From NCBI GenBank assembly GCA_965235115.1, contig OZ249436.1, positions 17,918,001 through 17,982,000 on the forward strand: a stretch of 64,000 nucleotides of DNA, written 5' to 3'. This DNA comes from Laetmonice hystrix (Eukaryota). How positions within the stretch are numbered: the first letter of the stretch is position 1; each line of letters opens with the position of its first letter. Below are positions 7,501-41,530 of this stretch, piece by piece. The notes under the pieces are model-generated. The model had not been told where the DNA came from. It ran no database searches and saw nothing but the letters and a program-made list of their open reading frames with translations. Both the position numbers and the translations under genes were made by a program.

Positions 7501-8838
7501 GGATAAGTCTGGAGATCGGAGAAATGGGTTAGAGTTTTGTGCCCGTTCGTTATTGATAGTTAGTTTTACCCACCAAGTTTTGTGAAGACGTTATCATGGT
7601 GACTGCCCGTTCCCAGTAAACCCCTCCCACTGTAGCAATATCATGTTCTCCCATCTAGCAACATAAGGCAAGCACAAAACTAGAAAAAAAATGGCTATTT
7701 TTCCATGGTCCGATAAGATTACCAAAGACATTTACATTGTTACTTTGCCATTCTTTCTAATGATAAAAGAGTGTAATTTTAGGTCTTTGTTCGCAGTATA
7801 TATCAACCATTTTGAAAAGTCTTTGTGCATGGTCGCAGACATTTCTTGGTGGATTATATCATCACCCACCTCCTGCCACTAAACGATAAAACGTCCGCTT
7901 TATTCTCTATGTATATAACACACCTGATCCGAACAAATCTCTTCAACCACCTCTGATATTAACTATGTGTCCCGAGGGTACAAGGTTTTCACATCACACC
8001 ACAATTTATGGCACCGTTTCGTGAATGTAATTTTAAGTAGCGGCGGTTTAAATAAAAAAGTGGTTCAAGTCGTTAGATCCATCATCCCGACATCCCCAAT
8101 ACTTCACTCTGATTAAAAAAAGCCACGTACGTTCAATCAAGCAGTTTACAATGCAGTTATTTTGGCAACCCATCCTGCTTGATTAGAATTGGCTGAAGTA
8201 ATAGCTCTTTTCATGCTGATTACTTGCCGTAATATTTCACAATCAACACACAATTACACGAAGCAGATGTATTGCCGAGATCCCAATCAACCAGAACCTT
8301 CACTATGTAGACTCTCCAAAGTCTACATTAGGAACTAAGGAGTCCCTAAAGTACAAACCGTGGATCATGTATGGAGACTGTGACGATAGTGTGATACACA
8401 TGATCGCAGACTTGTAATCCCCCTGCTGTAAATGCCTACGAGTATGATCTAAAAGTCACGATGTTATATTTACTTGCGAGTGTTCGAGTGGGTTTTAACT
8501 ATCAATGTCAGTTAGAACAGACTGGAGCATCTTTGAGTTTTGTGACATATTCCTGGTAGAATCGAATTTACCATTTGCAGCATCTTTCTCCACTCTTCAC
8601 GCCAAACAATATAATATAATGAAAACCCACGCGAACACGTATTCACGTTGAAAGATACAAACACGTAACGAGAGGAAAGTCCTTCACTGCGGGAAAGTAT
8701 GGAACGAGATGCCTGACGCATGAATACGGCACGTCACCGAAGGTGGAGTGCCGCATTCACGCGCCAAGTATCGAGTTCAGTTTATTAACTTTTACCTATA
8801 TTCTATCCGCGGGGCCACGGGATGGGGCGGTTTGTTAA

Positions 8839-9410
8839 AGGGAAATGTGAGTGTTCAAAGCGCCACCTAGTGAGCCGCGTTGGTACCACGGGGAAAATGT
8901 GAGTATTCAAAGCGCCGCGTAGTGAGCTTTAAAAGAAAACTGTTTGGCTTATTTATGCAGTCAACTAGGTTGATCTGGAAATCAGTAGTATTTTTTAAAC
9001 ACTGAACCAAACTGTGTGCCAGAACCTGTCTACTCCATTGAATGCTATAGTTAAGACCCGTGTTTTACCAAGGCACTGACTGTTTGGCAGGCTGTAACTT
9101 TTTTGTTGATTCGGTGACCCCCATTTTTTTTTGTTTTAAACTATTAGTCTTGGTCCACTTTATCTTGTCACCGAGTTTCAGGAGAAAATTGGTGGTCATT
9201 TTTTAACTATTAGTCAAAATGTCTGAAAAATCCTGTTTTTCCCATTGAAACCTATAGTAAAGACCCATTTTTTACGGAGGCCTGTATAAAAAAATCTAAT
9301 TCGGTGACATATGATTTTTTTTGTTTCTTTGTACTCCTAAGGACAAAGGCTATCCCCCATAAAAATATTTTGAAAATTCTAGTGGTGGATTCGAACACTC
9401 ACATTTCCCT
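8839..9410. mobile_element. Non-autonomous TIR element with TTAA TSD (Kolobok-like), 572 bp
   Basis: TTAA at 8835-8838 and 9411-9414; TIR AGGGAAATGTGAGTGTTC / GAACACTCACATTTCCCT; single TTAA at the empty site in copy B. Confidence 0.9.
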
Positions 9411-9549
9411 TTAAGTGGACACCCTCCCCCCATTTTTCTATACGATGCTTACAAAGTGGTAGCAAACTGAGGAGTGGGGGCTGTTGTTGGAACAGCCTAG
9501 CGTAACTTATAATACATGTTCCGGCGCTTCCATAGAGCCTCGTAGTTAA

Positions 9550-9876
9550 AGGAAATCTGTCCAAAAATTGAAATAAATGCAGTCAATTCTTCTAGCAGTC
9601 TGGTACTATGGCCCAATCCGTTGCTTAGTAACAACCGCCCTAACAATGCTAACGCGGTCATGGTGGTCGTTCTCGGTTCTCAGTCCATTGAGATAGGGAT
9701 GTATCGCCTCATTATGGCTCATAATCAACAAAAGACCTATAGCACAACAATGTTATGGATACGACAGAATGTTTTATCAGTCCAGTGGGATAGATTCAAG
9801 ATCAGACAAGCTTGAAATACGCGGATTCGTAGGAGATGGGGACAAAACTCGGCGGCCGTAGGGTGATCGATTACCT
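9550..9876. mobile_element. Second TTAA-flanked insertion (Kolobok-like), 327 bp
   Basis: TTAA at 9546-9549 and 9877-9880; short imperfect TIR AGGAAATC / GATTACCT; absent from copy B. Confidence 0.75.
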
Positions 9877-11207
9877 TTAACGTCACATCACGTAGATACA
9901 ATCAGTCCGTATGGAACACGCGTTCCATACGGACCACCGTATGCGCCCCCTGGCAGTGGCAGACCAATGCGTATATAATAAAAAGGGGAAAGGATTCAGT
10001 ACACCTACCCAAAATAACTCTTATACAATTCATGCACCTCAGCGTAAATTCATGAAGAAATTTTAGTAAAATATTAATTATCTTTGGTTGGTTTAGGGCT
10101 GAGAGGTGGCCAAAGTTTACGATGATTGAGATTAGTTTACGACTTGCCATGTCAGTTTGATAGGGTGGGGCTGATCATGGAATGAGTGTCGACTTGTTTA
10201 TGAAGGTATTATAGTTAATTGTCCTCGCTCCTGCCTAATGACGAGGGCCTCAGGGTCACGTACTATCCCTGAATTATGCATATTAATGTAGACTGCGAGC
10301 ACGTGGTTATCTGTGGGATGTATGAGTAGGAGCCAGCACGGCCTATATAATGTGATGTACGATCGCTCGGTGACAATCTGTGTTGACAAAGGCACGGTAT
10401 TATATCATGGGGCCTACACTCTCGACACCTTCAGACAATTTTCACATCGGGCAGTAAAATCAGTCAAATGGTGAGAGGCTCTCCCGAACGGTATGTGTCT
10501 ATAATAGAATCGTGTATGCCCCTCCTGAGTGAGTGAGTGAGTGAGGTTTTGCGCCATGTGGTCAGTATTTCAGCCATAATCAGGGCGATATGAACCATTT
10601 AGTTCAACCAAGGGACCTATTGTACTTCTCCCGAGTGATGATCAGGATGAAGTGAGAAAGAAGCCTGCCACCGGGAGGCGATTCTCTAGTCTTTTCGAAA
10701 AAATGGCACGGGGGTCTTTCTCTACCCAGGCACACAGACACGGCTGGACCTTTGATGACCCGGTTACGGAGCACTGGGGAGGAACAGCGAGATAAATGGT
10801 ACTGCAAGGATGCAAACCCATCTGTGCCACACAGAGGATTTTGCAGTTTGACACACGACAATTTCCCCAAACCTCCCCTCGCCCCAATGTTCGCCTTTCA
10901 CCAACAGCCAGGTGTTTTATAATATCCTATAACAGATTAAGACACCACACTGATATGAATTTGTAAGTCTGATGCTACCAGTATACACCAGTAATATATT
11001 ATACCTCATGATAATGAGGCTCACACTCGTGGCTGATATATTGTGCTAATATATTTCTCTAATATCGAGTGATACCCACAGTTGATATCCTTGGTTAATA
11101 TCAAATGTTATCTCCCTCTGATATCTAGTCCTCTATATGTGTGCTTCATGTTCAATAATTAACTGCCAGACATGCTTGAATCGACGCAATTTACTCGTCA
11201 CCATTTT

Positions 11208-11380
11208 AAAGTCAGACCTCGTTTATCCGAACAGCTTGGTGCCCATTAAAATGTATTCGGATTGTAGAAAATACGGATTACTGAATCATTTTAAATAGAA
11301 AATGGTAGATTATACCAGAAAGTGTGTTCGGATTGTGAGGTATACGGATTAAAGAAGCACGGATTAACGAGATTTACTTT
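11208..11380. mobile_element. Degenerate MITE with Tc1/mariner- or pogo-like ends
   Basis: Imperfect inverted ends aaagtcagacctcgtttatccg / cggattaacgagatttacttt; internal cggatt repeats. Confidence 0.45.
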
Positions 11381-12331
11381 CTCTGGATATTCCATGACCG
11401 GGAAAATACTCTTGTAATTAAAATAAGAAACAAATAGAGCAGAAAAACGCTAAATGTTGGCAGCGTCTACAACACGGCCTTTGTATGCCCGGTAAGCAGA
11501 AACCGTGCTTTGTTCCACTATTACCATGGTTACCGGCCGGAGGGAGCACAAACTACCGTGACTATCACGCAAACAGACCAGCGGGGCTTGTCACGTGGGG
11601 TCAGGTGATCGTTCTGGACCAATAATCAGCCGCGGAATCCATACCGAGGCTACCTCATGGTTCAGGGTGAAAATTCGCGACCCGGCCCTTCGAACTTCCC
11701 TGAAATCTTACAAATGGCACCTCGTTTATCGCTCAGACAAGGGGGTAGAAGAAATACTATTTGATGTAATAATTTCAATTACAATTTTACATTGAATGAT
11801 AAAATTGTAATTGTATAATAAAATACAATTTTATCAATTTTAAATGAATAAGTTTTAAATGAGAAAGGACGTGCCAGAATGGGGGTTCATGTAATGGTGT
11901 AGAAGTGATTGTAGCTATGAGTGGATGATTGCCATTATTCATATTGTATAAACTAATGAGGCTGTACCAAGTTGGATATATCTATGCACGGACAGTGTGA
12001 CTTACCATTCAAATTATTATAACAATGGGGGCGCCTTGTTTCTCACATACCGATTAAATCAATTGTCTTCCTACATGATTAATGCACCCACAGAAGCCTT
12101 TGTGTCGGAATCTCCCCGAACACCTGTTTATGACAAATACGTCGGTTTCTTTACATACGAGACGGCCACGTTAGGATACCTACTGGATCAATGTCCCTGT
12201 AAGAATAGGTTAATTTACATATTCGCCAGCGCGGTTGTTATCGTGGAAATGTCTAATTATGGTGGATTTGTTTTTTTACGGACCGTATAAAGTCAGACAC
12301 ATCCGTACACGTCCGTATACACAGCAAGCCT

Positions 12332-12910
12332 GGTTCAGGTCAGCCAGCAGGGATTTCATTCACGTTCAGGTCAGCCAGCAGGGATTTCAATCACGTCCAG
12401 GTCAGCCAGCAGGGATTTCAATCACGTTCAGGTCAGCCAGCAGGGATTTCAATCACGTTCAGGTCAGCCAGCAGGGATTTCAATCACGTTCAGGTCAGCC
12501 AGCAGGGATTACAATCACGTTCAGGTCAGCCAGCAGGGATTTCAATCACGTTCAGGTCAGCCAGCAGGGATTTCAATCACGTTCAGGTCAGCCAGCAGGG
12601 ATTTCAATCACGTTCAGGTCAGCCAGCAGGGATTTCAATCACGTTCAGGTCAGCCAGCAGGGATTTCAATCACGTTCAGGTCAGCCAGCAGGGATTTCAT
12701 TTACGTTCAGGTCAGCCAGCAGGGATTTCAATCACGTTCAGGTCAGCCAGCAGGGATTTCATTCACGTTCAGGTCAGCCAGCAGGGATTTCAATCACGTT
12801 CAGGTCAGCCAGCAGGGATTTCAATCACGTTCAGGTCAGCCAGCAGGGATTTCAATCACGTTCAGGTCAGCCAGCAGGGATTTCAATCACGTTCAGGTCA
12901 GCCAGCAGGT
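12332..12910. repeat. Minisatellite, 31-bp unit, ~18-19 copies
   Basis: Unit ttcaggtcagccagcagggatttcaatcacg; explains ORF 12235-12969. Confidence 0.97.
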
Positions 12911-13295
12911 CTAGCCCTGGAGAAGGGAGCTATAGACACACCCTGTCCCTAGATCTGAAGGGGGTATAGACGCACCCTGTCCCCAGCCCTGGAGGGGTAT
13001 AGACCCGCCCTGTCCCTAGCCCTGGAGGAAGGGTATAAACGCACCCTGTCCCTAGCCCTGGAGGGGGTATAGACCCGCCCTGTCCCTAGCCCTGGAGGAG
13101 GGGTATAGACGCACCCTGTCCCTAGCCCTGGAGGAGGGGTATAGACCCGCCCTGTCCCTAGCCCTGGAGGGGGTATAGACACACCCTGTCCCTAGCCCTG
13201 GAGGGGTATAGACACATCCTGTCCCTAACCCTGGAGGATGGGGTATAGACACACCCTGTCCCTAGCCCTGGAGGAGGGGGGTATAGACACACCGT
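12911..13295. repeat. Minisatellite, ~34-37-bp unit, ~10 copies
   Basis: Unit tagacacaccctgtccctagccctggagg(ag)gggta; abuts the 31-bp array. Confidence 0.95.
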
Positions 13296-13579
13296 GTTCC
13301 CGCCATGAGGACTCCCGCCTCCATACACCGTGTATACATGTAAGTGTAGACCACTCAAACGTACTCGTTTCTATGGCAATCCTTTCAGCCTTCCCAGAAT
13401 ATCCTCCGGGGATGGCGGAAGAACAGGCACAACACTCATACATACAGGTACCTATGTAATCACATCTACAACGTAATCACACAGGGTCTCTGCTTTACAG
13501 GTTACCATGACAACACTGTATCGTGATCGCGCGGGATCACATAATCAGGAAGTTATCGCCGTATTCGCTCATACTCACT

Positions 13580-17834: not shown

Positions 17835-17836
<2 letters not shown>

Positions 17837-17880: not shown

Positions 17881-17887
<7 letters not shown>

Positions 17888-20170: not shown

Positions 20171-21205
20171 CAGCTGTGTGTCAATATTATGAAAGGTGGC
20201 AGTTTGGGCCCAGAGAGGTGTCAATATTAGGAAAGGTGATAGTTTGGGCCCAGAGAGGTGTCAATGTTATGAAAGGTGACAGTTTAGCCCCTGGGATGTG
20301 TCAATGTTATCAGACGTGACAGTATAGCCCCAGGGGGGTGTCAATGTTATAAAAGGTGGAAGTATAGCCCCTGGGATGTGTCAATGTTATCAGAGGTGAC
20401 AGTATAGCCCCTGGGATGTGTCAATGTTATCAGAGGTGACAGTATAGCCCCTGGGATGTGTCAATGTTATGAACAGTGACAGTATAGCCCCTGGGATGTT
20501 CAATGTTATGAAAGGTGACAGTGTAGCCCCTGGGACATGTCAATATTATCAGAGGTGACAGTATAGTCCCAGCTGTGTGTCAATATTATGAAAGGTGACA
20601 GTTTGGGCCCAGAGAGGTGTCAATATTATGAAAGGTGACAGTTTAGCCCCTGGGATGTGTCAATGTTATCAGACGTGACAGTATAGCCCCAGGGGGGTGT
20701 CAATGTTATGAAAGGTGGAAGTATAGCCCCTGGGATGTGTCAATGTTATCAGAGGTGACAGTATAGCCCCTGGGATGTGTCAATGTCGTCAGACGTGAAA
20801 GTATAGCCCCTGGGATATGTCAATGTTATCAGAGGTGACAGTATAGCCCCAGGGAGGTGTCAATGTTATGAAAGGTGGCAGTATAGCCCCTGGGATGTGT
20901 CAATGTCGTCAGACGTGAAAGTATAGCCCCTGGGATATGTCAATGTTATCAGAGGTGACAGTATAGCCCCAGGGAGGTGTCAATGTTATCAGAGGTGACA
21001 GTTTAGCCCCAGGGAGGTGTCAATGTTATGAAAGGTGACAGTATAGCCCCTGGGATGTGTCAATGTTATCAGAGGTGACAGTATAGCCCCTGGGAGGTGT
21101 CAATGTTATGAAAGGTGGCAGTATAGCCCCTGGGATGTGTCAATGTTATCAGAGGTGACAGTATAGCCCCTGGGATGTGTCAATGTTATCAGAGGTGACA
21201 GTTTG
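20171..21205. repeat. Minisatellite, 40-bp unit, ~26 copies
   Basis: Unit gtgtcaatgttatcagaggtgacagtatagcccctgggat. Confidence 0.97.
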
Positions 21206-21481: not shown

Positions 21482-21539
21482 GTCAGCTTTATCCATCACC
21501 TGGAGTGGGGGGGGGGCAGTTGGAGGTGGTGGGGGGTAG

Positions 21540-22320
21540 GGTGTGTAGGGGAAGGGGGAGAAGGAGGAAGGTAGGGTGTGGGTGAGGTGGATGGGGTGTA
21601 GGCGGGGTGGGAAGGAGATGGCGTGGGGTAGGGTGTGGGTGAGGGGTAGGGGTGGGTAGGGCGGGAAGGAGACGGGGTAAGGAGGGTGTAGGTGAGGGGT
21701 GGGGGTGGGGTAGGGGTGGGTGAGGGGTGGGGTGGGGTAGGGGTGGGTGAGGGGTAGGGGTGGGGTAGGGGTGGGTGAGGGGTGGGGTGGGGTAGGGTGT
21801 GGGTGAAGGATGAGGGGTGGGGTACGGGGTGGGTGAGGGGTGGGGTGGGGTAGGGGTGGGTGAGGGGTAGGGGTGGGGTAGGGGTGGGGTTAGGGGTAGG
21901 GGTGGGGTTAGGGGTAGGGGTGGGGTTAGGGGTGGGTGAGGGGTAGGGGTGGGGTAGGGGTGGGTGAGGGGTGGGGTAGGAGTGGGTGAGGGGTGGGGTG
22001 GGGTAGGGTGTGGGTGAAGGATGATGGGTTGGGTACGGGGTGGGTGAGGGGTGGGGTGGGTGAGGGGTGGGGTGGGTGAGGGGTGGGGTGGGTGAGGGGT
22101 GAGGTAGGGTGGATGAGGGGTAGGGGTGGGTGAGGGGTGGGGTGGGGTGGGGTAGGGTTAGAGGTGGGGTGGGGTAGGGTTAGGGGTGGGGTGGGGTAGG
22201 GTTAGGGGTGGGGTGGGGTAGGGTTAGGGGTGGGGTGGGGTGGGGTAGGGTTAGGGGTGGGGTGGGGTGGGGTAGGGTTAGGGGTGGGGTGGGGTAGGGT
22301 TAGGGGTGGGGTGGAGTGGA
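21540..22320 (+). repeat. G-rich low-complexity tract (ggggtggggtaggg(tt)a, gggtga)
   Basis: Dozens of G3-G4 runs with short loops; almost no C on the + strand. Confidence 0.95.
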
Positions 22321-23062
22321 GTGAGTATAGGGTAAGACTGGGGGAGAGACTGGGGGAGGGTCTGATTGCGACTGTTGGTATGATGTCCTTGTGGCAGGGT
22401 CTGGGATGTTCGGGGGTCTGGACATTAGAGCTGGCTCGTATGTACATGTATACTATGCGATTTTTGATTATCTTTCAGCATCAAACAAACATAACACTCC
22501 ATTAAAGGAGAGTAATTTGTCTCATTATAAAACCATCTAGTTGGTGAGGGGAAGATGACAGTCTATATCTTATACTTTTGTTATATCAGAGCGTGAATAG
22601 TCTCCTCCTCTCTAACATTACATCTCACCTTCATAAAGACGGATCGGTTTGCCTTAATTCAAGCTGGGATATCTTGTTATCTACTCTGAACGAAACCAGA
22701 TGAGACAATATGGTGGAGTAGATATAGATAATGATTGACTATACCCCGTCCTCCTCCACCATAATTCAGCCGGCATTGAGTTATACACAAGTGGATTTGG
22801 TGCCTACCTTCAGCTCTCCCATCCTAACTACTCTCTGTGAACTAGCCACCCGGGAATCCGACAAGTCATTACAGCCTTACATTCTAATCACAATCGAAAT
22901 TATCAACAACTTTCTCAGCCTAGAGACCCGCCTTCCCATGGTTATATCTTCACACGAGGAGAGGATTATCCTATTAGTGGGATGTACCTCCCAGGAGGGC
23001 TGCTCATGGATGTCCTATTTGTGTAATAGCTCCATGATTGACATAGTATGCCGCTCAATCTA

Positions 23063-24264: not shown

Positions 24265-24443
24265 NNNNNNNNNNNNNNNNNNNNNNNNNNNNNNNNNNNN
24301 NNNNNNNNNNNNNNNNNNNNNNNNNNNNNNNNNNNNNNNNNNNNNNNNNNNNNNNNNNNNNNNNNNNNNNNNNNNNNNNNNNNNNNNNNNNNNNNNNNNN
24401 NNNNNNNNNNNNNNNNNNNNNNNNNNNNNNNNNNNNNNNNNNN
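24265..24443. other. Assembly gap (N run)
   Basis: N characters. Confidence 1.
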
Positions 24444-25431: not shown

Positions 25432-26975
25432 ATAACATGACCCACTCATTTAGTTAACCCTCGCCCTCCCAGTCCGACTGAAGGATTCAAACATAACATG
25501 ACCCACTCATTTAGTTAACCCTCGCCCTCCCAGTCCGACTGAAGGATAAAAACATAACATGACCCACTCATTTAGTTAACCCTCGCCCTCCCAGTCCGAC
25601 TGAAGGATTCAAACATAACATGACCCACTCATTTAGTTAACCCTCGCCCTCCCAGTCCGACTGAAGGATTCAAACATAACATGATCCACTCATTTAGTTA
25701 ACCCTCGCCCCCCCCCAGTCCGACTGAAGGATTCAAACATAACATGACCCACTCATTTAGTTAACCCTCGCCCTCCCAGTCCGACTAAAGGATTCAAACA
25801 TAACATAACCCACTCATTTAGTTAACCCTCGCCCTCCCAGTCCGACTGAAGGATTCAAACATAACATGACCCACTCATTTAGTTAACCCTCGCCCTCCCA
25901 GTCCGACTGAAGGATTCAAACATAACGTGACCCACTCATTTAGTTAACCCTCGCCTCCCAGTCCGACTGAAGGATTCAAACATAACATGACCCACTCATT
26001 TAGTTAACCCTCGCCCTCCCAGTCCGACTGAAGGATTCAAACATAACATGTCCCACTCATTTAGTTAACCCTCGCCCTCCCAGTCCGACTGAAGGATTCA
26101 AACATAACATGACCCACTCATTTAGTTAACCCTCGCCCTCCCAGTCCGACTGAAGGATTCAAACATAACATGACCCACTCATTTAGTTAACCCTCGCCCC
26201 CCCCAGTCCGACTGAAGGGTTCAAACATAACATGACCCACTCATTTAGTTAACCCTCGCCCTCCCAGTCCGACTAAAGGATTCAAACAGAACATGACCCA
26301 CTCATTTAGTTAACCCTCGCCCTCCCAGTCCGACTGAAGGATTCAAACATAACATGACCCACTCATTTAGTTAACCCTCGCCCTCCCAGTCCGACTGAAG
26401 GATTCAAACATAACATGACCCACTCATTTAGTTAACCCTCGCCCTCCCAGTCCGACTGAAGGATTCAAACATAACATGACCCACTCATTTAGTTAACCCT
26501 CGCCCTCCCAGTCCGACTGAAGGATTCAAACATAACATGACCCACTCATTTAGTTAACCCTCGCCCTCCCCCAGTCCGACTGAAGTATTCAAACATAACA
26601 TGACCCACTCATTTAGTTAACCCTCGCCCTCCCAGTCCGACTGAAGGATTCAAACATAACATGATCCACTCATTTAGTTAACCCTCGCCCTCCCAGTCCG
26701 ACTGAAGGATTCAAACATAACATGACCCACTCATTTAGTTAACCCTCGCCTCCCAGTCCGACTGAAGGATTCAAACATAACATGTCCCACTCATTTAGTT
26801 AACCCTCGCCCTCCCCCAGTCCGACTGAAGGATTCAAACATAACATGACCCACTCATTTAGTTAACCCTCGCCCTCCCAGTCCGACTGAAGGATTCAAAC
26901 AAACATGACCCACTCATTTAGTTAACCCTCGCCCTCCCCCAGTCCGACTGAAGGATTCAAACATAACATGCCCTC
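25432..26975. repeat. Minisatellite, 61-bp unit, ~25 highly similar copies
   Basis: Unit cataacatgacccactcatttagttaaccctcgccctcccagtccgactgaaggattcaaa. Confidence 0.98.
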
Positions 26976-30510: not shown

Positions 30511-32519
30511 GGCGGGTGGGGGGGGGTGGGGGGCGTCTCCACCATCCCTTTGGTAGAGGTGAAGGAGGCCCGTAAAAGGAGGGTGTCTTTGCGGAATGTT
30601 ATAGTTTGAAGTATTAACCAGCCTGGTGAATATACTGTTCTGACCAGGATCACGTGGCAGAGCTGACTACCAGCCTCGTTCTGGGATGTGACATACGCAG
30701 GCGTGCGTGTCTATAGAGTTAGGGTCAGAGGTCAAGTTTTTCATCTGCACCAGGAGTTTACGGCAGCTCAGCGATCGGGCAATTTAGTGGTCACGGCATC
30801 TTATACTTCACGACAGGTGGCCAGCCACTCCCTCGACCACTGGTCAATGAAATGACCAGACTAGTTGTGTATAGTCTGTAGTTCCATACATTACCTTAAT
30901 ACAGTAATTATTATGTGCTGCCAGACATAGAGGATTCATACAATTCATACAAGGGCACTATGATTACCAAACTTCTCTAATCTTCTACGATCTATGATGG
31001 AGCATGGTAAACGCCCGTTTCTACATGAGCACCCGTCGGTCCGTCCAACAACCCCCCCCCCCCCCCCCCCCGTCGCTGCCTACAGTACACGTACACATGT
31101 TCCTTTGTGAAAACCTGGTTTATGTGATCCCACCCTTGTGTGAACGAATACATTTTCATTTCCATGCATGTATGATTTAATTAGAATTGGCGGAATGAGA
31201 CGTCACCATGGTTACAAGAAACACACAATCTGTTCGTGGCTGGGATCTAATTGGCCACCACTCCTGAGACTTGCTCATACAACAGAATTCCACGACATAT
31301 TGCATTGAAATTATGCAGTCACAACTGTGGTCAGGGATCAGCGGTGCCATTGTCGCCATGGCAACAAGGTCAAAGGTCACGAATTATGGGCGAGATCATG
31401 TTAGGCTTAACAATCGGCGCTGAGTGAGGAGGGTCGGACTTTACAATTCTATGAGGGATATGTACTTGGCCTCCACGGTCAGTACTCCTCCTGTAAGCCC
31501 CTCCCACACGGTACACAGATGGTATTCCTCCTGTACGTCAGGTAAAGAAACATGCAGTGAGACCGACGCTCACCTGACGGCCGTGATTGCCACCGATACT
31601 TGTCAATCTGAAGTAAAATTAGTTGTTCAATAGTTCAACAGTTATTTTATTTGATGATCTTCTTCTTCTTCTTCATCTTCTTGTTCTACTTCTACTTCTT
31701 CTTCTCCTCCTCCTCTCCTCCTTATTTCCTATTACTATATCTTGAGAGAGTCATTCTACTCCAAACGTTACTTATAGTTACCACAGTGACGATAACACAG
31801 GATGACGACGTTATACAGTCGAGTTGCCACGGGTAACAGAGTCAGGTAAGAAACGTCGGGAAGGTCTATACACTGAGGGTCATCTTAGTGCAAAATGTAC
31901 ACGACGCTGAGTACACAGACAACGTTTAACATTGAGTATACAGATACTCACTGCGTATAGGTCTACAATCAATGAGAGGAACTTACGACATATGAATCAG
32001 TCCACATGGATTATCGCATACCTTCCTACATTCACACCCTCCCGCATTGCTGATTTATACATTCTAACATTTATTATACATCACCTTAGACATTTACAGA
32101 CCACTCAGCATTGATTATACACCCAGCAATACGTTAATTATAAACAGAGATCCATGATTGCAAACACCAGCCTATTGTCATCTTGAACCCTATCGATAAG
32201 TCTTAATTTCATAGGATCTAATTATTTCCCACAGAGTGACATTTCTCCACGGTGTTGCTTCCAAAGCAATCAGAATATGTAAATACGGTGGCTCCATGCA
32301 GATGTGGAGTGTTCGGCCTTTTGTTATTGATCAGCTCACCCTGATTGGCCAGTGCAAGGGCCAAGTATATTACGGTAGAGGACACACCATTAAGTCTCGG
32401 CTGCCGGTCTTATAAATCTTTTACCAATAGCCTTATTACCATACAAAATAGGTGCCGGGGTGCTCTGGCTAATGCAGACATTATACACAGTAGCATGACT
32501 GCGGTCTTGCCTTCCAGAC

Positions 32520-33229
32520 TCGCCATCACATGTCATTCAATGTATGTACTTGGGGAATAACTCGCCATCACATCTCATTCAACGTATGCACTTGGAGAAT
32601 AACTCGCCATCATATCTCATTCAATGTATGTACTTGGGGAATAACTCGCCATCACATCTCATTCAATGTATGCACTTGGAGAATAACTCGCCATCATATC
32701 TCATTCAATGTATGTACTTGGGGAATAACTCGCCATCACATCTCATTCAATGTATGCACTTGGAGAATAACTCACCCTCACATCTCATTCAATGTATGCA
32801 CTTGGAGAATAACTCGCCATCACATCTCATTCAATTTATGCACTTGGAGAATAACTCACCACCACATCTCATTCAACGTATGCACTTGGAGAATAACTCG
32901 CCATCATATCTCATTCAATGTATGCACTTGGGGAATAACTCGCCATCACATCTCATTCAACGTATGCACTTGGAGAATAACTCGCCATCACATCTCATTC
33001 AATGTATGCACTTGGGGAATAACTCGCCATCACATCTCATTCAACGTATGCACTTGGAGAATAACTCGCCATCATATCTCATTCAATGTATGCACTTGGA
33101 GAATAACTCACCCTCACATCTCATTCAATGTATGCACTTGGAGAATAACTCGCCATCATATCTCATTCAATGTATGCACTTCGAGAATAACTCGCCATCA
33201 CATCTCATTCAATTTATGCACTTGGATAA
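32520..33229. repeat. Minisatellite, 42-bp unit, ~17 copies
   Basis: Unit tcgccatcacatctcattcaatgtatgcacttggagaataac. Confidence 0.97.
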
Positions 33230-33439
33230 TACGAAGTGTTGCAGGACACGGAAACCAAACAAAATCTAAGAATGGTTCATATGTTTGTCATCTTTTGGAA
33301 GAATATGATTTAGCTTCCCTGTACGGGTCTCCCTCCATCTCTTGCTCTACTCTACCCTCTCGGCACACTCAAGATTTACAGCGATATAAGGAGATTTGAA
33401 ATCATGAGGCTGATTTTAGAACCGACCACAAGTTGGTAC

Positions 33440-34190
33440 ATAATGACGCCGGTCTGTGGACAGGGGTCACATGGACTCCGGTCTGCGGACAGAGGTTACA
33501 TGGACGCCGGTCTGTGGACAGGAGTCACATGGACGCCGGTCTCTGGACAGGGGTAACATGGACGCCAGTCTCTGGACAGGGGTCACATGGACACCGGTCT
33601 CTGGACAGGGGTAACATGGACGCCGGTCTGTGGACAGGGGTCACATGGACGCCGGTCTGTGGACAGGGGTAACATGGACGCCGGTCTCTGGACAGGGGTC
33701 ACATGGACACCGGTCTCTGGACAGGGGTAACATGGACGCCGGTCTGTGGACAGGGGTCACATGGACTCCGGTCTGTGGACAGGGGTCCCATGGACTCCGG
33801 TCTGTGGACAGGGGTCACATAGTCTCCGGTCTGTGGACAGGGGTCACATGGACTCCGGTCTGTGGACAGGGGTCACATGGACTCCGGTCTGTGGAGAGGG
33901 GTCACATGGACCCCGGTCTGTGGACAGGGGTCACATGGACGCCGGTCTCTGGACAGGGGTAACATGGACTGCGGTCTGCGGACAGGGGTCACATGCACTC
34001 CGGTCTGCGGACAGGGGTCACATGCACTCCGGTCTGTGGACAGGGGTCACATAGACTCCGGTCTGTGGACAGGGGAACCAGAACCGGTCTCTGGACAGGG
34101 GTAACATATGGACTGCGGTCTGCGGACAGAGGTTACATGGACGCCGGTCTCTGGCAGGGGTCACATGGACGCCGGTCTCTGGACAGATGT
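33440..34190. repeat. Minisatellite, 29-bp unit, ~25 copies
   Basis: Unit ggacgccggtctgtggacaggggtcacat. Confidence 0.96.
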
Positions 34191-34864
34191 CACTGAATGT
34201 TGCTGACCTGGCGTAGAACGAGGATGGAGGGGGGGGGCTAGCTAAAACGTCACAAACTTTGGGTACTTGGACATACTGACGTCACAAACACTGTGTGTTG
34301 TGACGTCCTGGTTATGTGACAGGGACGTGGGTCTCAAACACACTGAACCATACGACTTTATTGAGACCCAGGAGCGCCCCGATTGATGCACTTGGCCCAC
34401 TTGAGAGGATCAGGGCCCCTTGCCCTCTCCCCGGCAGGCCGAGCACATGATTTCCTTCCTTTCATACTTCCATGAACCTGACCTAGTAATATCAAACTGT
34501 TTATCAGTCGGCTCGCCGCATCTCTAAATGTCAATAACAAGAGCACCTTTTTTTCAGTTGACCAGCGGTTGACATTACGTTTTTTTTTATTAAATGCCCT
34601 GCCTGTAAACATTTCGCTGGGTTGAGAAAGTGAAACACAAAGCGATGCCGGCTATCGGCTCTAACCACGACCCTGTGTGTGACTTTCTCCCCCGCCCCAC
34701 CTCGAACCCCCCGGACTCTCCGCACGCTCGGTGATAGTGGCCAGGGTAGACTGACCATCGGTCAATACCGACTTGATTGACCATTGGGCAGGAGCCACCC
34801 ATGGGGCAGGCTCACACGGGGTTTGTTAACCCCACGTCAACAGTCCATCGACTCCGCCACAGAA

Positions 34865-35644: not shown

Positions 35645-37630
35645 ACTACCATCACATGAAGGCAGAACACACACAGTCTCATGTCTGTGCTGCCATCACA
35701 TAAAGACAGCACACATACAGTCTCATGTCCGTGCTGCCATCACATAAAGACAGCACACATACAGTCTCATGTCTGTGCTGCCATCACATAAAGACAGCAC
35801 ACATACAGTCTCATCATGTCCGTGCTGCCATCACATAAAGACAGCACACATACAGTCTCATCATGTCCGTGCTGCCATCACATAAAGACAGCACACATAC
35901 AGTCCTATCATGTCCGTGCTGCCATCACATAAAGACAACACACATACAGTCTCATCATGTCTGTGCTGCCATCACATAAAGACAGCACACATACAGTCTC
36001 ATGTCCGTGCTGCCATCACATAAAGACAGCACACATACAGTCTCATCATGTCCGTGCTGCCATCACATAAAGACAGCACACATACAGTCTCATGTCCGTG
36101 CTGCCATCACATAAAGACAGCACACATACAGTCCTATCATATCCGTGCTGCCATCACATAAAGACAGCACACATACAGTCTCATGTCCGTGCTGCCATCA
36201 CATAAAGACAGCACACATACAGTCCTATCATGCCCCTGCTGCCAACACATAAAGGCAGAACACATACAGTCTCATCATGTCCGTGCTGCCATCACATAAA
36301 GACAGCACACATACAGTCTCATGTCCGTGCTGCCATCACATAAAGACAGCACACATACAGTCTCATCATGCCCGTGCTGCCAACACATAAAGGCAGAACA
36401 CATACAGTCCTATCATGTCCGTGCTGCCATCACATAAAGACAGCACACATACAGTCTCATCATGCCCGTGCTGCCAACACATAAAGGCAGAACACATACA
36501 GTCCTATCATGTCCGTGCTGCCATCACATAAAGACAGCACACATACAGTCTCATCATGCCCGTGCTGCCAACACATAAAGGCAGAACACATACAGTCCTA
36601 TCATGTCCGTGCTGCCATCACATAAAGACAGCACACATACAGTCTCACCATGCCCGTGCTGCCAACACATAAAGGCAGAACACATACAGTCCTATCATGT
36701 CCGTGCTGCCATCACATAAAGACAGCACACATACAGTCTCATGTCCGTGCTGCCATCACATAAAGACAGCACACATACAGTCTCATCATGCCCGTGCTGC
36801 CAACACATAAAGGCAGAACACATACAGTCCTATCATGTCCGTGCTGCCATCACATAAAGACAGCACACATACAGTCTCATCATGCCCGTGCTGCCAACAC
36901 ATAAAGGCAGAACACATACAGTCCTATCATGTCCGTGCTGCCATCACAGTCTCATCATGCCCGTGCTGCCAACACATAAAGGCAGAACACATACAGTCCT
37001 ATCATGTCCGTGCTGCCATCACATAAAGACAGCACACATACAGTCTCATCATGTCCGTGCTGCCATCAGATAAAGACAACACACATACAGTCTCATCATG
37101 TCCGTGCTGCCATCACATAAAGACAACACACATACAGTCTCATCATGTCCGTGCTGCCATCACATAAAGACAACACACATACAGTCTCATCATGTCCGTG
37201 CTGCCATCACATAAAGACAACACACATACAGTCTCATCATGTCCGTGCTGCCATCACATAAAGACAACACACATACAGTCTCATCATGTCCGTGCTGCCA
37301 TCACATAAAGACAACACACATACAGTCCTATCATGTCCGTGCTGCCATCACATAAAGACAACACACATACAGTCTCATCATGTCCGTGCTGCCATCACAT
37401 AAAGACAACACACATACAGTCTCATCATGTCCGTGCTGCCATCACATAAAGACAACACACATACAGTCCTATCATGTCCGTGCTGCCATCACATAAAGAC
37501 AGCACACATACAGTCCTATCATGTCCGTGCTGCCATCACATAAAGACAACACACATACAGTCTCATCACGTCCGTGCTGCCATCACATAAAGACAACACA
37601 CATACAAACTTATCATGGATGTGCTGCCAT
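35645..37630. repeat. Minisatellite, 44/47-bp unit, ~43 copies, with dimeric higher-order section
   Basis: Unit catacagtctcat(cat)gtccgtgctgccatcacataaagacagcaca. Confidence 0.98.
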
Positions 37631-37949
37631 CGCATAAGGACAACAGTCCCATGTCCGTAGGCATTGGGGAGGGGGGGGGGCAACTTGTGAGTACACCCCT
37701 TCATTCCCCCTCCCCCTTTGTTTGTACGTATTTATCTTACAGTATATTAGACCTGGTAGGGTCCATACCGCACCTCTCACAACATAAGGCCATCTGATAC
37801 ACTAGAGTGTAGGTTGTAGGGAAATGACTTTTGTCGGTTTTTACATATTAGCAATCAGCAAATTGAAACTAATACCCATCTAATGCCTCAGGTGTAAAAT
37901 TGATCTTTGGATACTTTGAAGGTGAACCGGCCTCCAGTTTCTGGCAAGG

Positions 37950-37980
37950 TTGCGCACCGGAAGTCGACCGCCAAGTATGC
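37950..37980 (+). promoter_or_regulatory. Candidate promoter / non-coding first exon
   Basis: CCGGAAGT at 37957-37964 followed by CAA|gtatgc donor at 37975. Confidence 0.3.
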
Positions 37981-38144
37981 CCCTCCCCCCTAGAATGGGT
38001 CTAGATCTATAATTTTATCCCAATACCATAGTTTGTGCTGATTGCATGCCTCTCACTGGCAGATCTCATTGGTCCTCCCTGTGAGGAGGGTTGTCCGTCA
38101 CAAGCTGGGATGTCTAGTTTCCCCACTCCGGTTTTGTCCCCCCC

Positions 38145-39180
38145 CCCCCCGTCAGACCAGTTTATAAGAGGTGAGGGGTGTCGCCCGTCAGACCAGTCTG
38201 GAGGAGGTGGGGGGGGGGGATGTCCCTCCGTCAGACCAGGCTGTAGGAGGCGATGGGGTGTCCCCCCCCCCCGTCAGACCAGGCTGTAGGAGGTGAGGGG
38301 GTGTCCCCCCGTCAGACCAGGCTGTAGGAGGTGAGGGGGGTGTCCCCCCCGTCAGACCAGGCTGTAGGAGGTGAGGGGGTGTCCCCCCGTCAGACCAGGC
38401 TGTAGGAGGTGAGGGAGGTGTCCCCCCGTCAGACCAGGCTGTAGGAGGTGGGGGGGGGGGTCCCCCGTCAGACCAGGCTGTAGGAGGTGAGGGGGGTGTC
38501 CCCCCGTCAGACCAGGCTGTAGGAGGTGAGGGGGTGTCCCCCGTCAGACCAGGCTGTAGGAGGTGAGGGGGGTGTCCCCCCGTCAGACCAGGCTGTAGGA
38601 GGTGAGGGGTGTCCCCCCGTCAGACCAGGCTGTAGGAGGTGAGGGGGGTGCCCCCCCCCCCCCGTCAGACCAGGCTGTAGGAGGTGAGGGGGGTGTCCTC
38701 CCGTCAGACCAGGCTGTAGGAGGTGAGGGGGGTGTCCCCCCGTCAGACCAGGCTGTAGGAGGTGAGGGGGTGTCCCCCCGTCAGACCAGGCTGTAGGAGG
38801 TGAGGGGGGTGCCCCCCCCCCGTCAGACCAGGCTGTAGGAGGTGAGGGGGGTGTCCTCCCGTCAGACCAGGCTTTAGGAGGTGAGGGGGTGTCCCCCCGT
38901 CAGACCAGGCTGTAGGAGGTGAGGGGGGTGTCCCCCCGTCAGACCAGGCTGTAGGAGGTGAGGGGGTGTCCCCCCCCCCCCCCCCGTCAGACCAGGCTGT
39001 AGGAGGTGAGGGGGGTGTCCTCCCGTCAGACCAGGCTTTAGGAGGTGAGGGGGTGTCCCCCCGTCAGACCAGGCTGTAGGAGGTGAGGGGGGTGTCCCCC
39101 CGTCAGACCAGGCTGTAGGAGGTGACGGGGGGTGCCCCCCCCCCGCGTCAGACCAGTCTGGGGAGGTGAGGGGGGCCGTG
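38145..39180. repeat. Minisatellite, ~35-40-bp unit with variable G and C runs, ~27 copies
   Basis: Unit ccgtcagaccaggctgtaggaggtgagggg(g)tgtcccc. Confidence 0.96.
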
Positions 39181-39222
39181 CCCCCATCAGACCTGCCGCG
39201 CCAACTGATGTCTTAATAAAAC

Positions 39223-39291
39223 ATGGCGCAGGTTTCAGACCAACTGTCACACTGGGGAAGGAAACTGAACATAACAAGCCATTTGTGTGTT
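39223..39291 (+). CDS. Candidate first coding exon MAQVSDQLSHWGRKLNITSHLCV
   Basis: Acceptor ccatcag| at 39190, aaaacATGG context, GTT|gtgagt donor. Confidence 0.4.
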
Positions 39292-39545
39292 GTGAGTAAC
39301 CTAGTTTACATAGGCTGTCAGAGCTGGGCGGCCGGCCAGAGTGATCGATAGGATAGCTCGGCCAGCCTGAGGTCAGCCTGGCTCGGTGTTTGTCGTCACA
39401 ATGATTGACAGCTCGTCTCACGTCAGCCTCAATCGCTCACCGCGCGCCCCACTCGCTATTGATTTCAATTCCCGCCGACAGGGGGCGATATCTGTTGCCG
39501 TCACACGCGTCCCATCACTGAGAACCTGGGTCCCTGACAGCTCAC

Positions 39546-39647
39546 CCTCTGTCCATCTCTCCCAGCACAGGTCCGAGGGTTCCTGGCGGCACCCTGTCAC
39601 CGTCACCCTGCCCACTGCTACAACTAACGTCTTCATATCGGCGTATT
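39546..39647 (-). CDS. Candidate internal exon (E)YADMKTLVVAVGRVTVTGCRQEPSDLCWERWTE; overlaps an alternative + strand candidate
   Basis: cctacag| acceptor and GAGG|gtgagc donor. Confidence 0.25.
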
Positions 39648-40989
39648 CTGTAGGTCTACAGGCTGCGGCCGCCAGTCCGCTCGGCCCGCCACCTGGCGGC
39701 AGGGGGTGGAAGCGATACCGACCGGGCATCTCGTGAAGTGAGCCTCTACAGTCCCATTCAGTGCCTCCCCCCTCCCTCCCGGCATCCCAGAGGAGTCCAC
39801 TGTGATCAATCTGATTACGGTCTTCATTTGCTGGCTTTCACCGCCAGGTGCGAACAGTCATTGCTTACACATCGACTACACCTGCTGTCCTCTCACGGCT
39901 CCTGCACACTGAACGTCTCCACTTTGAAAACAGCGGGGGAATGTGGAAAATATGCCCGGGTAGTTTTCGTCTCCATTGTAAGGGAAATGAGTAAATCTAT
40001 AGAAAATTACCGTAGTTTTCCAGGCGTAGAAATACACAAGTCTCCTTTGCCCTGCTATCCAGTGACTTGCTCTCATTTTTGCCGTTAAATTTAAATGAAA
40101 TGTTCCGTTTATTTTCTCCAGGAAAGTGCATGCAGTCATTGCTGCATTCAACAGTGATTTGTATGCAGAATTGTATTAGGCCTACATATGTCCTAAATTA
40201 AAACGTTTCCTTTCCCCCAAATCGATGAAACATATGAAAAATTGGTACGCGAGCCTATAAATCTGTGAGCAATGCCTGTGCGCGTGTATTCTAAAACAAG
40301 TGCTGCTGTACAGAATCTGAAAGAGGTCATTCGTGCAGGGAGAACTGCTTATAATAAAGTATGTCATTTAAAAGAAAAACTCTTTAGACTTATGTGGATT
40401 GTGTTGTGGCGTTAGCGAACCGCTCCACAATGTATCAGGCGAACGCGAGGCGCCAGCTTTTCATTTTTCATTTGTGTATCTTCAATAGAAAAACACTTGT
40501 ATCAATAGACTGCAACGGCTATACCGTTATATGTCCCATCGCTCTATCCATCTGTCCCATCGCTCTGTCCATCTGTAAAAGGTCCGGGCCCACTGGTCCG
40601 ACTGATCGACTGATTGTGGATGGGTTTTTTAGGCAAATTTGACCGTATAGTAATAAAAAAAACTAGAATTGGACTATACCCCACAGTGTCTGCCGGGTGC
40701 TGGGAACTCATTGAAGCACCGTCCCTGAGCTCAGCAGTCACTCGCGGATCTAAGTATGATTCTGCATGATCTTGTGCTCTGAAGAGCCCACCGTGTGTCG
40801 CCATCAGTATCAACCTCAGTGTGGAACGTATTAAATTGTGTAACATTGATACGATAATTTATACCCATGCATGTGTCAGTAAGTCGATGGAAACACGTGG
40901 TTTTGCTTATTTTCTAAAAATGCCTGTCGGTGTCGGTAGGCCTGGTCGTGGTGTTTAACTTGGTGATGACATTGATATCGGTGGCGTTT

Positions 40990-41530
40990 GATATTCAAAC
41001 ACGTAACGGGATGAAGGTCATTCACTGGGGGAACGTATGGAACGAGATGCCTGGCGCATGAATACGGCACAACATCGAAGGTGGAGTGCCGTATTCATGC
41101 GCCAGGCATGGAAGCATCGAGTTCCATACTTTCTCCCATTGAAGGACCCTCATCCCGTTATGGTTTATTATGCACTTAGATTATTTCTAATTAATTTTAA
41201 GGAAGGGAACCAACAGTAAACAAGAATTAACAACATATATCCGCAGGGCCACGGGACTGGGCGGTTTGTTAAGTGGCCACCCTCCCCCATTTTTTCTACA
41301 TGGTGGTCACATAGTGGTAGCAAACTGAGGGGTGGGGCCTCCTGTTGGAAGAGCCGAACGAAATTTATCATACATGTTCTGGCGCTTCCATAGGCCCTCA
41401 TAATTAGCGTCGCATCACGTGTACAATCATAGGACTCATTATCAGTCCGTATGGAACATGCGTTCCATACGGACCACCGTATGCCCCCCCCCCCCCCATG
41501 GCACTGACAGATGGAATACGCATATTATAG
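40990..41530. mobile_element. Two-hairpin dispersed element, copy B (uninterrupted)
   Basis: Homologous to 8654-9978; 24-bp perfect inverted repeat 41047-41070 / 41086-41109 and 12-bp hairpin 41446-41473. Confidence 0.85.

What the first reader, a model, noticed from the sequence alone, without database searches (positions are those of the whole stretch)
8654..41530. Dispersed element with two hairpins sharing a GTATGGAAC arm and no visible TIR or TSD
Seen: two colinear copies (8654-9978 and 40990-41530). Copy B has a 24-bp perfect inverted repeat (41047-41070 / 41086-41109) nested inside gtatggaac...gttccatac, and ~340 bp further on a second hairpin tccgtatggaac-N4-gttccatacgga (41446-41473; 9906-9933 in copy A). 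The small hairpin is perfect in both copies although the loop and surrounding sequence differ. Inference: the shared arm is a recognition site of a non-autonomous element moved without a DDE transposase (tyrosine-recombinase or rolling-circle type), or the large hairpin is a structured-RNA precursor.
Basis: partly seen in the sequence, partly recalled or inferred. Interest (0 to 1): 0.7.

Follow-up and report, generated by a model that had tools for sequence, protein, structure and literature searches.

The report
Gene-less Helentron-type transposon with long hairpin
The two look-alike stretches are old copies of a 535-base, gene-less mobile element with several hundred copies or more, built like a Helitron2/Helentron rolling-circle transposon; its unusually long end hairpin has mismatches that are stable on one strand only, which suggests it works as single-stranded DNA.

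Summary
Copy B (40996-41529) is near full length. Copy A (8658-9984) is the same element, broken by one deletion and two TTAA-flanked insertions. They are independent insertions of an old dispersed family: copies are 80-92% identical to the consensus, and terminal motifs occur at 146-352 genomic sites against 0 in controls.

First, the large hairpin has arms of about 80 nt, not 24. Second, the element does have a perfect 14-nt inverted repeat, but an asymmetric one: one copy at the terminus, the other internal and abutting the long hairpin. Third, read on the window's minus strand, the layout is canonical Helitron2/Helentron (HLE2): T-run, left repeat, right repeat, stem-loop, T-run, with no target duplication.

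The long hairpin carries three tandem G.A mismatches and a CCGAAGG apex, a known DNA mini-hairpin. All its non-Watson-Crick positions are of the stable kind on the + strand only.

The genome holds over 100 intact Helentrons, but the six I sampled share no termini with this family. No autonomous partner and no empty site were found. Hairpin arms are no better conserved than the rest, so host selection for an RNA gene is not supported. My confidence in the HLE2 reading is about 0.6.

The parts
40996..41529 (-). Copy B, a near full-length element (535-nt consensus). The strand given is the canonical HLE2 orientation; all coordinates and motifs below are read on the + strand.
   Evidence: BLAST limits against 29 loci; unitig depth step at both ends
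40997..41171 (+). Long terminal palindrome. Left arm 40997-41070, apex 41071-41085, right arm 41086-41171, with an 8-nt insertion at 41110-41117 specific to this copy. The consensus stem runs 16 bp, GA/GA, 2 bp, G/G, 8 bp, T.G, 17 bp, GA/GA, 25 bp, GA/GA, 4 bp, then a GAA loop.
41035..41043 (+). GTATGGAAC motif in the left arm. Its inverted partner is at 41121-41129. Each is followed, towards the apex, by the GA of a tandem G.A mismatch (41044-41045 and 41119-41120).
41163..41176 (+). Internal copy (B') of the 14-nt inverted repeat, directly abutting the foot of the long hairpin. It is degenerate in this copy; the consensus is TTTATTATATGCGC. With the right arm's end it forms the reverse complement of the joined element ends.
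   Evidence: (20 exact genomic instances)
41413..41429 (+). Third, inverted copy (A'') of the 5'-terminal motif ACACGTAACGGG, just upstream of the small hairpin. It is partly deleted in copy B.
   Evidence: 3 of 1000 shuffles reach the score
41446..41473 (+). Small hairpin with a 12-bp perfect stem that contains GTATGGAAC and a 4-nt loop
41518..41529 (+). 3'-terminal copy (B) of the 14-nt inverted repeat, plus an A-run that varies in length between copies (a T-run on the minus strand)
8658..9984 (-). Copy A, the same element in four pieces: 8658-8778 (consensus 1-121), 8802-8838 (239-275), 9411-9549 (272-412) and 9900-9984 (443-535). Most of the right arm of the long hairpin and B' are deleted. 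The small hairpin at 9906-9933 is intact.
8839..9410 (.). Nested 572-bp MITE with 36-nt inverted ends and a TTAA duplication (8835-8838 and 9411-9414). It is not part of the family. Copy B shows the empty site.
   Evidence: I3
9550..9876 (.). Second nested insertion of 327 bp, also flanked by TTAA (9546-9549 and 9877-9880). It is not part of the family.
   Evidence: the family consensus supplies the empty site

Best explanation
The two stretches are independent, old insertions of a roughly 535-bp non-autonomous element of the Helitron2/Helentron group (HLE2; a 'HINE').

Read on the window's minus strand, the element runs as follows: a run of 3-5 T, a 14-nt left repeat, a small 12-bp hairpin, and a central part that can expand into tandem repeats. 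Then come the 14-nt right repeat, a 175-nt stem-loop placed directly after it, and a closing TTT.

Inferred mechanism: a Rep/helicase (HUH nuclease) of an autonomous HLE2 nicks one end, peels off one strand up to the terminal stem-loop, and joins the ends into a single-stranded circle. The circle then inserts into a T-rich site without duplicating it.

The GTATGGAAC inverted pairs in both hairpins, and the ACACGTAACGGG motif present three times, are probably the protein's binding modules at the two ends. Because the internal site is the exact complement of the joined ends, the folded + strand brings the 5' and 3' termini side by side on an internal splint.

Shown here: the anatomy, copy number, age, absence of a TSD, strand asymmetry, and the presence of active-looking Helentrons in the genome. 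Inferred: the enzyme, the single-stranded intermediate, and the roles of the motifs.
For: 1. Boundaries are sharp and common to many copies, and there is no TSD above chance.
2. The 3' end and an internal site form a 14/14 inverted repeat (0 of 1000 shuffles). The internal copy directly abuts a stem-loop that reaches the other terminus. [quoted passage not shown]
3. On the minus strand both boundaries are T-runs of 3 or more whose length varies between copies. This matches 'a string of Ts (2 to 5) on the boundaries... vary in number' (PMC4067079).
4. There are palindromes at both ends, as stated for Helitron2 and for the 5' IR of DINE-1.
5. One copy (L024) has a 40-bp internal segment expanded to a tandem array, a HINE trait.
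6. The genome holds 125 Helitron_like_N matches, over 100 of them in open frames of 1,600-3,600 aa. One such frame carries DUF6570, Rep, PIF1 and Exo_endo_phos, which makes it a Helentron. The 3' ends of two sampled copies, one of them closing a head-to-tail concatemer, carry 12-bp-stem, 4-nt-loop hairpins, and the arm 12-mer recurs about 40 nt inside the 5' end of the concatemer copies. That is the same design as here.
7. The long hairpin's consensus has three tandem GA/GA mismatches, one G/G, one T.G and a C-GAA-G apex. These are the stable kinds on the + strand and the weakest kinds (TC/TC, C/C, A.C) on the other strand. MFE with DNA parameters is -91.3 against -84.5 kcal/mol. CCGAAGG is a documented DNA mini-hairpin in the single-strand initiation signal ssiA (PMC13037366).
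Against: No autonomous element with these termini was found. About 170 kb around six Helentron copies from four subfamilies share nothing with the family. No paralogous empty site was obtained, so insertion between T and T is not shown; a crossover at TTT would look the same. The stem-loop is some 10 times longer than those reported for HLE2. Head-to-tail junctions are absent (0 exact hits against 20 for the internal inverted copy). The + strand also satisfies an 'end repeat, inner repeat, hairpin' layout (A, A'', small hairpin), so the orientation is not settled. The strand asymmetry would also favour an RNA fold (-148 against -134 kcal/mol).
Confidence: 0.6

Rival explanations
1. A non-autonomous element moved by a tyrosine recombinase (Crypton, or a DIRS/Ngaro-type retroelement derivative). 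A circular intermediate would recombine with a TTT target, and the internal copy of the joined ends would act like the 'internal complementary region' of DIRS1.
For: There is no TSD. TTT sits at both boundaries, and exactly TTT lies at the internal junction copy. The internal sequence is the complement of the joined ends, which is the logic of the DIRS1 ICR (established knowledge, Poulter and Goodwin 2005). Unchecked notes of this scan report Ngaro-type elements with junction hairpins and TTT insertion in this genome.
Against: There are no split direct repeats (A1...B1A2B2) and no inverted terminal repeats of the DIRS1 kind: the two long arms are adjacent, not terminal. The joined ends do not themselves form a hairpin. 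A canonical HLE2 layout produces the same 'complement of the joined ends' automatically. The GAA triloop closed by C-G is a DNA-type feature. No recombinase-bearing partner was looked for with sequence in hand.
Confidence: 0.15
2. A retroposon (SINE-like, or derived from a LINE 3' end) copied by target-primed reverse transcription, with the small hairpin as the reverse-transcriptase recognition stem.
For: The + strand ends in an A-rich tail containing AATAAA. In the copies recovered, the + strand 5' start varies widely (consensus 31 to 239) while the 3' end is usually kept.
Against: No TSD above chance. No tRNA, 5S or 7SL head and no other Rfam family. A 175-nt near-perfect palindrome at the 5' end is not a SINE trait. 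Many truncation points lie inside the palindrome, where deletion is expected anyway. The A-run is only 3-5 nt.
Confidence: 0.06
3. A cut-and-paste (DDE) MITE or foldback element whose true ends I have misplaced.
For: Several inverted repeats are present. Five copies start near consensus 239 next to TATA.
Against: The two termini are not inverted repeats of each other. There is no TSD. The depth step and the BLAST limits agree on the ends. By contrast, the two true MITEs nested in copy A show clear TTAA duplications.
Confidence: 0.05
4. A host family of structured-RNA or small-RNA (hairpin RNA, miRNA-like) genes kept by selection.
For: The hairpin is long and stable, and the + strand is favoured as RNA too. 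There are weak miRNA-precursor-like scores.
Against: Decay is uniform across the element: arms 0.88, whole element 0.89 identity to consensus, with CpG sites decaying fastest. The number of intact small hairpins (146 with at most 1 mismatch) is about what neutral decay of several hundred copies predicts (my arithmetic). Rfam scores are far below threshold. Some copies may still feed small-RNA silencing, which is untested because no RNA runs exist.
Confidence: 0.04

Closest known systems
HINEs / DINE-1 (non-autonomous Helentrons; Thomas et al. 2014, PMC4067079)
   Same: Gene-less, high copy number, and no TSD. A sub-terminal inverted repeat lies 0-4 nt from one end, and its partner is followed by a stem-loop near the other end. 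Both boundaries are T-runs of variable length. There is an extra inverted repeat near the 5' end, and the central part can expand into tandem repeats.
   Different: The stem-loop is 175 nt (arms about 80) instead of 5-22 bp. It abuts both the inner repeat and the terminus. It carries three tandem G.A mismatches. No partner Helentron with these ends was found, and T-T insertion is not demonstrated.
Helitron2 / HLE2 as defined in the HELIANO paper (PMC11417382)
   Same: Asymmetric terminal inverted repeats of 12-16 nt (14 here), palindromes at both ends, and a stem-loop after the right repeat.
   Different: A second, weaker end-repeat and hairpin set exists on the opposite strand (A, A'', small hairpin), so either strand reads as an HLE2. 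If the + strand is the reference, the layout is that of 'HLE2-reverse' (stem-loop upstream of the left repeat).
Canonical Helitron (HLE1)
   Same: No TSD, a hairpin near one end, and a presumed rolling-circle mechanism.
   Different: There is no 5' TC, no 3' CTRR, and no hairpin about 11 nt from the end. The flanks are not A|T.
DIRS1 internal complementary region / Ngaro split repeats (tyrosine-recombinase retroelements)
   Same: An internal sequence complementary to the joined element ends; no TSD.
   Different: There are no terminal inverted or split direct repeats of that kind, no coding relatives in hand, and the loop is DNA-type.
Single-strand initiation signals and origins of rolling-circle replicons (RSF1010 ssiA with CCGAAGG; phage G4 origin with GCGAAAGC; PMC13037366)
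   Same: The apex of the long hairpin is the same CCGAAGG mini-hairpin (C-GAA-G with a sheared G.A). It marks one strand only.
   Different: Those are bacterial or phage priming sites. No role in a eukaryotic transposon has been described, and the function here is inferred only.
Parvovirus terminal hairpins (flip/flop, mismatched bubble)
   Same: A long terminal palindrome with small asymmetric mismatches, acted on by an HUH nuclease. About 5 of 24 copies here have the apex segment inverted.
   Different: There is no sequence or coding relation. The inversions may be ordinary palindrome recombination after insertion.

Membership tests
HLE2 non-autonomous element (Helitron2/Helentron; HINE) | Short inverted repeats of 12-16 nt, one at or within a few nt of the 5' terminus, the other sub-terminal | tested here: met
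   A 14/14 match between the terminal and the internal site; 0 of 1000 shuffles reach it. The internal site occurs exactly at 20 genomic places.
HLE2 non-autonomous element (Helitron2/Helentron; HINE) | Stem-loop after the right repeat, near the 3' terminus | tested here: met
   The palindrome starts directly after the inner repeat and ends at the terminus. It is far longer (175 nt) than described cases.
HLE2 non-autonomous element (Helitron2/Helentron; HINE) | Insertion between T and T, no target-site duplication, T-runs at the boundaries | tested here: inconclusive
   There is no TSD above chance (n=9). T-runs of 3-5 and 3-6 lie at the two ends on the minus strand.
HLE2 non-autonomous element (Helitron2/Helentron; HINE) | Termini shared with an autonomous Rep/helicase(-endonuclease) element | tested here: inconclusive
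   Helentrons are abundant, but 170 kb around six copies of four subfamilies show no similarity. The divergent Rep families listed could not be fetched.
HLE2 non-autonomous element (Helitron2/Helentron; HINE) | Central micro- or minisatellite expansion in some copies | tested here: met
   L024 has a 40-bp internal segment repeated at least 6 times. This is not specific to the family.
Canonical Helitron (HLE1) | 5' TC, 3' CTRR with a 16-20-nt palindrome about 11 nt upstream, A-T insertion | tested here: not met
   On the + strand the termini read CAAACACG... and ...ATAATAAAA, on the minus strand TTTTATTAT... and ...CGTGTTTG.
MITE of a DDE transposon | Terminal inverted repeats at both termini plus a fixed-length TSD | tested here: not met
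   The ends are not complementary to each other, and there is no TSD.
SINE | Pol III-type head (tRNA/5S/7SL), variable-length TSD, simple-repeat or A tail | tested here: not met
   No Rfam head at E up to 10; no TSD; only a 3-5-nt A-run.
DIRS/Ngaro-type element | Inverted terminal repeats plus an ICR, or split direct repeats A1...B1A2B2 | tested here: not met
   Only the 'complement of the joined ends' is present. The long arms are adjacent, and the terminal motifs are not repeated in direct order.
Known RNA family (miRNA precursor and others) | Score at or above the Rfam gathering threshold | tested here: not met
   The best is mir-1271 at 29.1 bits against 80.5.

The most novel reading that the evidence does not exclude
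The long hairpin would be a strand-specific single-stranded-DNA device of HLE2 transposons that has not been described. Its tandem G.A mismatches and CCGAAGG mini-hairpin apex would mark which strand is mobilised and keep the hairpin free of single-strand-binding protein, as at priming or initiation sites. The adjacent complement of the joined ends would act as an internal splint, aligning the 5' and 3' termini for Rep-mediated circle closure. If general, this gives a sequence-only read-out of the transferred strand and of the circle junction for Helitron2/Helentron elements.
Probability: 0.25. Interest if true: 0.65.

Novelty: new variant of a known kind. Interest (0 to 1): 0.42.

Why it matters
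Helitron2/Helentron elements are widespread, but how their ends are recognised is known only by analogy with Helraiser. This family puts the same 9-mer in hairpins at both ends. It carries an internal complement of the joined ends. It also has a 175-nt terminal hairpin whose every imperfection is stable on one strand and unstable on the other. Together these are testable predictions about the strand that moves, the Rep binding sites and the circle junction. For annotation, the family explains several hundred or more 'unknown' repeats in this genome, and it shows that tools expecting short HLE2 hairpins would miss such elements. As a locus in this window it is ordinary junk DNA with no sign of host function.

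Tried and rejected
1. I suspected that the 5' flank repeats the 3' tail, as a terminal direct repeat or tandem remnant. By eye it looked so, but local alignment against shuffles showed no signal (an earlier run had picked the wrong arm of the palindrome).
2. I looked for long TSDs and found none above the mismatched-pair control.
3. I tried for an empty site through a repeat in the left flank of L016. The other repeat simply ends at the junction, so it was uninformative.
4. I tested the abundant Helentrons as partner. There was no similarity in 170 kb, and no 5' repeat matching their own 3' unit was found in the stretches I held.
5. I searched for head-to-tail concatemers of this family: 0 hits, against 20 for the calibration pattern.
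6. RNA evidence was not obtainable. No RNA runs exist; the three runs are contigs of one sample and showed no allele lacking the element.
7. I searched for relatives outside the genome. One metagenome scan gave a single unrelated hairpin array.
8. I tried to count 'flip' against 'flop' apex forms genome-wide: 132 against 37 hits. At least 17 of the 37 are the opposite-strand reading of ordinary copies, and several others are variants in which one G.A pair is repaired, so only 'flop is a minority' can be said.
I fetched nothing more from the genome and did not try another route.

Full report
WHAT IS THERE

The window is part of contig 1 of a 627-Mb eukaryotic assembly. Copy B aligns with 29 other loci from 40996/40997 to about 41525-41530. 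Unitig depth in three runs of one sample gives the same limits independently. It jumps from about 100 to 8,000-51,000 at 40996 and drops back between 41514 and 41550. Copy A (8658-9984) is the same element in four pieces. It lacks consensus 122-238 and is interrupted by two insertions, each flanked by TTAA (8839-9410 and 9550-9876). The flanks of A and B are unrelated, so these are separate insertions, not a local duplication. The assembly gap at 24265-24443 lies far from both copies. It bears only on their spacing and relative orientation.

FAMILY SIZE AND AGE

- The first look found 956 candidates, of which 40 were scored at 71-81% identity to copy B.
- The small hairpin with at most one mismatch occurs at 146 sites.
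- A 29-mer of the 5' end with at most three mismatches has 352 hits, 34 of them perfect.
- Reversed-pattern controls are 0 in each case.
- Copies are 80-92% identical to a 535-nt consensus built from 16 copies.
- CpG positions have decayed more than others (0.83 against 0.90).

ANATOMY (+ STRAND; CALLS 22, 54)

1. The element begins CAAACACGTAACGGG (motif A).
2. A 175-nt palindrome follows, whose far arm ends in the complement of A.
3. Directly after it comes TTTATTATATGCGC (B'), the exact complement of the element's 3' end (B).
4. A central part of about 230 nt follows.
5. Then comes an imperfect inverted copy of A (A'').
6. Then the small hairpin (12-bp stem, loop ACGC).
7. After about 45 more nt comes B, then an A-run.

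B and B' match 14/14, and 0 of 1000 shuffles reach that. For A and A'', 3 of 1000 shuffles reach the score. GTATGGAAC sits in both arms of both hairpins. Because A' and B' are adjacent, the internal site is the reverse complement of the 3' end joined to the 5' end. It is found exactly at 20 places in the genome. A whole-element fold pairs B' with the 3' end next to the foot of the long hairpin.

ENDS AND TARGET

Nine copies with both ends show no flank duplication beyond chance. An apparent repeat of the 3' tail upstream of the 5' end did not survive a shuffle test. On the minus strand the element starts with 3-5 T and ends with TTT or more. The run length differs between copies. I obtained no empty site. 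One attempt was uninformative, and after no more genome sequence could be cut out.

COMPARISON WITH KNOWN KINDS

Thomas et al. 2014 (PMC4067079) describe HINEs and DINE-1 with these features:
- 12-15-nt sub-terminal inverted repeats 2-4 nt from the 5' end;
- a palindrome between the 3' repeat and the 3' end;
- T-runs of 2-5 at the boundaries that vary in number;
- insertion into TT, and frequent central tandem repeats.

The same paper states that Helitron2 has asymmetric terminal inverted repeats and palindromes at both ends. The HELIANO paper (PMC11417382) gives the canonical HLE2 layout as 12-16-nt inverted repeats with a stem-loop after the right repeat. It also describes an 'HLE2-reverse' form with the stem-loop upstream of the left repeat. 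Read on the minus strand, this family meets every structural point. One copy (L024) has a 40-bp internal segment expanded into an array. The 5' TC and 3' CTRR of canonical Helitrons are absent. So are the paired terminal repeats and TSD of MITEs, and the head and TSD of SINEs.

THE ENZYMES ARE PRESENT, BUT THE PARTNER IS NOT IDENTIFIED

The genome has 125 Helitron_like_N matches, most in open frames of 2,000-3,600 aa without stops. One 3,617-aa frame contains DUF6570, Helitron_like_N, PIF1 and a C-terminal Exo_endo_phos domain. That is the Helentron architecture. Two sampled loci end in 75-bp units, each with a 12-bp-stem, 4-nt-loop hairpin. In one of them the units close a head-to-tail concatemer of two 99.9%-identical copies whose own ends lack them. 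The arm 12-mer recurs about 40 nt inside the 5' end of those concatemer copies. So a hairpin-arm motif repeated at the opposite end is a feature of bona fide Helentrons here too. However, 170 kb around six copies of four subfamilies share no sequence with the family. The more divergent Rep families could not be examined. Head-to-tail junctions of the small family are absent.

THE LONG HAIRPIN IS STRAND-SPECIFIC

An unchecked note of this scan (s1-352467) describes another small HLE2-like element with a long hairpin marked by G.A pairs. Prompted by it, I paired the consensus arms. From the foot to the apex the stem reads:
- 16 bp, then GA opposite GA;
- 2 bp, then G/G;
- 8 bp, then T.G;
- 17 bp, then GA/GA;
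- 25 bp, then GA/GA;
- 4 bp, then a GAA loop closed by C-G.

The GA/GA state is the commonest at all three places among 30 copies. Variants have one side converted to a Watson-Crick partner, and about 5 of 24 copies have the apex segment inverted. Genome-wide, the GA-CACC-GAA form has 132 hits, against 37 for the inverted form, and many of those 37 are opposite-strand readings. On the other strand the same places would be TC/TC, C/C and A.C. With DNA parameters the + strand folds at -91.3 against -84.5 kcal/mol. With RNA parameters the values are -148.0 against -133.8. The apex CCGAAGG is listed as a DNA mini-hairpin in the single-strand initiation signal ssiA. Related GCGAAGC-type hairpins occur at single-stranded phage origins (PMC13037366). 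A search of the held papers returned no paper on Helitrons that mentions tandem G.A mismatches. This points to a function as folded single-stranded nucleic acid of + polarity. DNA is more likely than RNA because of the GNA triloop. That fits a rolling-circle mechanism.

NO SIGN OF HOST SELECTION

Identity to the consensus is flat along the element. The long arms are at 0.88-0.89, the small hairpin arms at 0.88, the central part at 0.89 and the tail at 0.90. With about 0.88 per site, roughly a quarter of copies should keep the small hairpin with at most one mismatch. The 146 observed fit several hundred copies decaying neutrally (my arithmetic). Rfam gives nothing near threshold. No RNA run is available.

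VERDICT

The tyrosine-recombinase alternative remains possible at about 0.15, because an internal complement of the joined ends and T-run boundaries are also what such elements show. The RNA-gene reading is unsupported. Membership in HLE2 is structural only. The partner and the T-T empty site are missing.

Noticed in passing
window 8835-9414 and 9546-9880: Two different MITE-like insertions inside copy A. Both are flanked by a duplicated TTAA and both begin AGG(G)AAAT. The first (572 bp) has 36-nt inverted ends. Copy B and the family consensus give the empty sites. They look like a TTAA-targeting (piggyBac-like?) family, although the termini are not the usual CCC...GGG.
   Followed up: partly
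window, whole (e.g. 1-1296, 12333-13297, 20177-21202, 25432-26970, 32518-34193, 35649-37645, 38145-39193, 42222-42971, 45785-47520, 51393-52339, 62067-62633): The window is unusually dense in minisatellite arrays: at least 25 arrays with periods of 17-63 bp, each 0.3-2 kb long and often 90-99% homogeneous. No common flanking sequence links them.
   Followed up: partly
L031-L035 (G000:C11:7300001-7350000): Two 19.3-kb Helentron copies, 99.9% identical, lie head to tail: the 3' end of one abuts the 5' end of the next. A diverged third 5' end and two 1.4-kb repeats follow, and only then the terminal 75-bp hairpin units. Each copy has an uninterrupted 3,617-aa frame with about 2,200 aa upstream of the Rep domain, of which only DUF6570 was recognised.
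   Followed up: partly
L024 (G000:C5:15773460-15776752), about 2370-2640: In one copy of the family, a 40-bp internal segment (around consensus 395-435) is expanded into a tandem array of at least 6 units. This shows minisatellite birth inside the element.
   Followed up: partly
L012 (G000:C13:15782142-15785582), about 1500-2035: In this copy the 3' terminal 100 nt lie inverted upstream of the 5' end. That is what an inversion between the inverted motifs A and A'' would produce.
   Followed up: partly
L021, L022 and three further hits; also window 8795-8838: At least five copies begin at consensus position about 235-239, preceded by TATA, and copy A has a deletion ending at the same point. This may be a recurrent breakpoint or a shorter subfamily of about 300 bp.
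   Followed up: partly
window 41625-41772: Unitig depth rises to 800-1,900 just right of copy B, so another, unrelated repeat of moderate copy number starts there.
   Followed up: no
L048 (metagenome contig Ga0209562_1037191), about 300-1100: An unrelated array of roughly 100-bp units, each with a GTGGAAC...GTTCCA-type hairpin followed by GTCGAGGT and A/T/G-rich spacers. It matched the small hairpin by chance.
   Followed up: no
window 21500-22330 and 43160-43350: G-rich (GGGGT/GGGTGA)n-like arrays with strong GC skew, similar to each other at about 75% identity.
   Followed up: no
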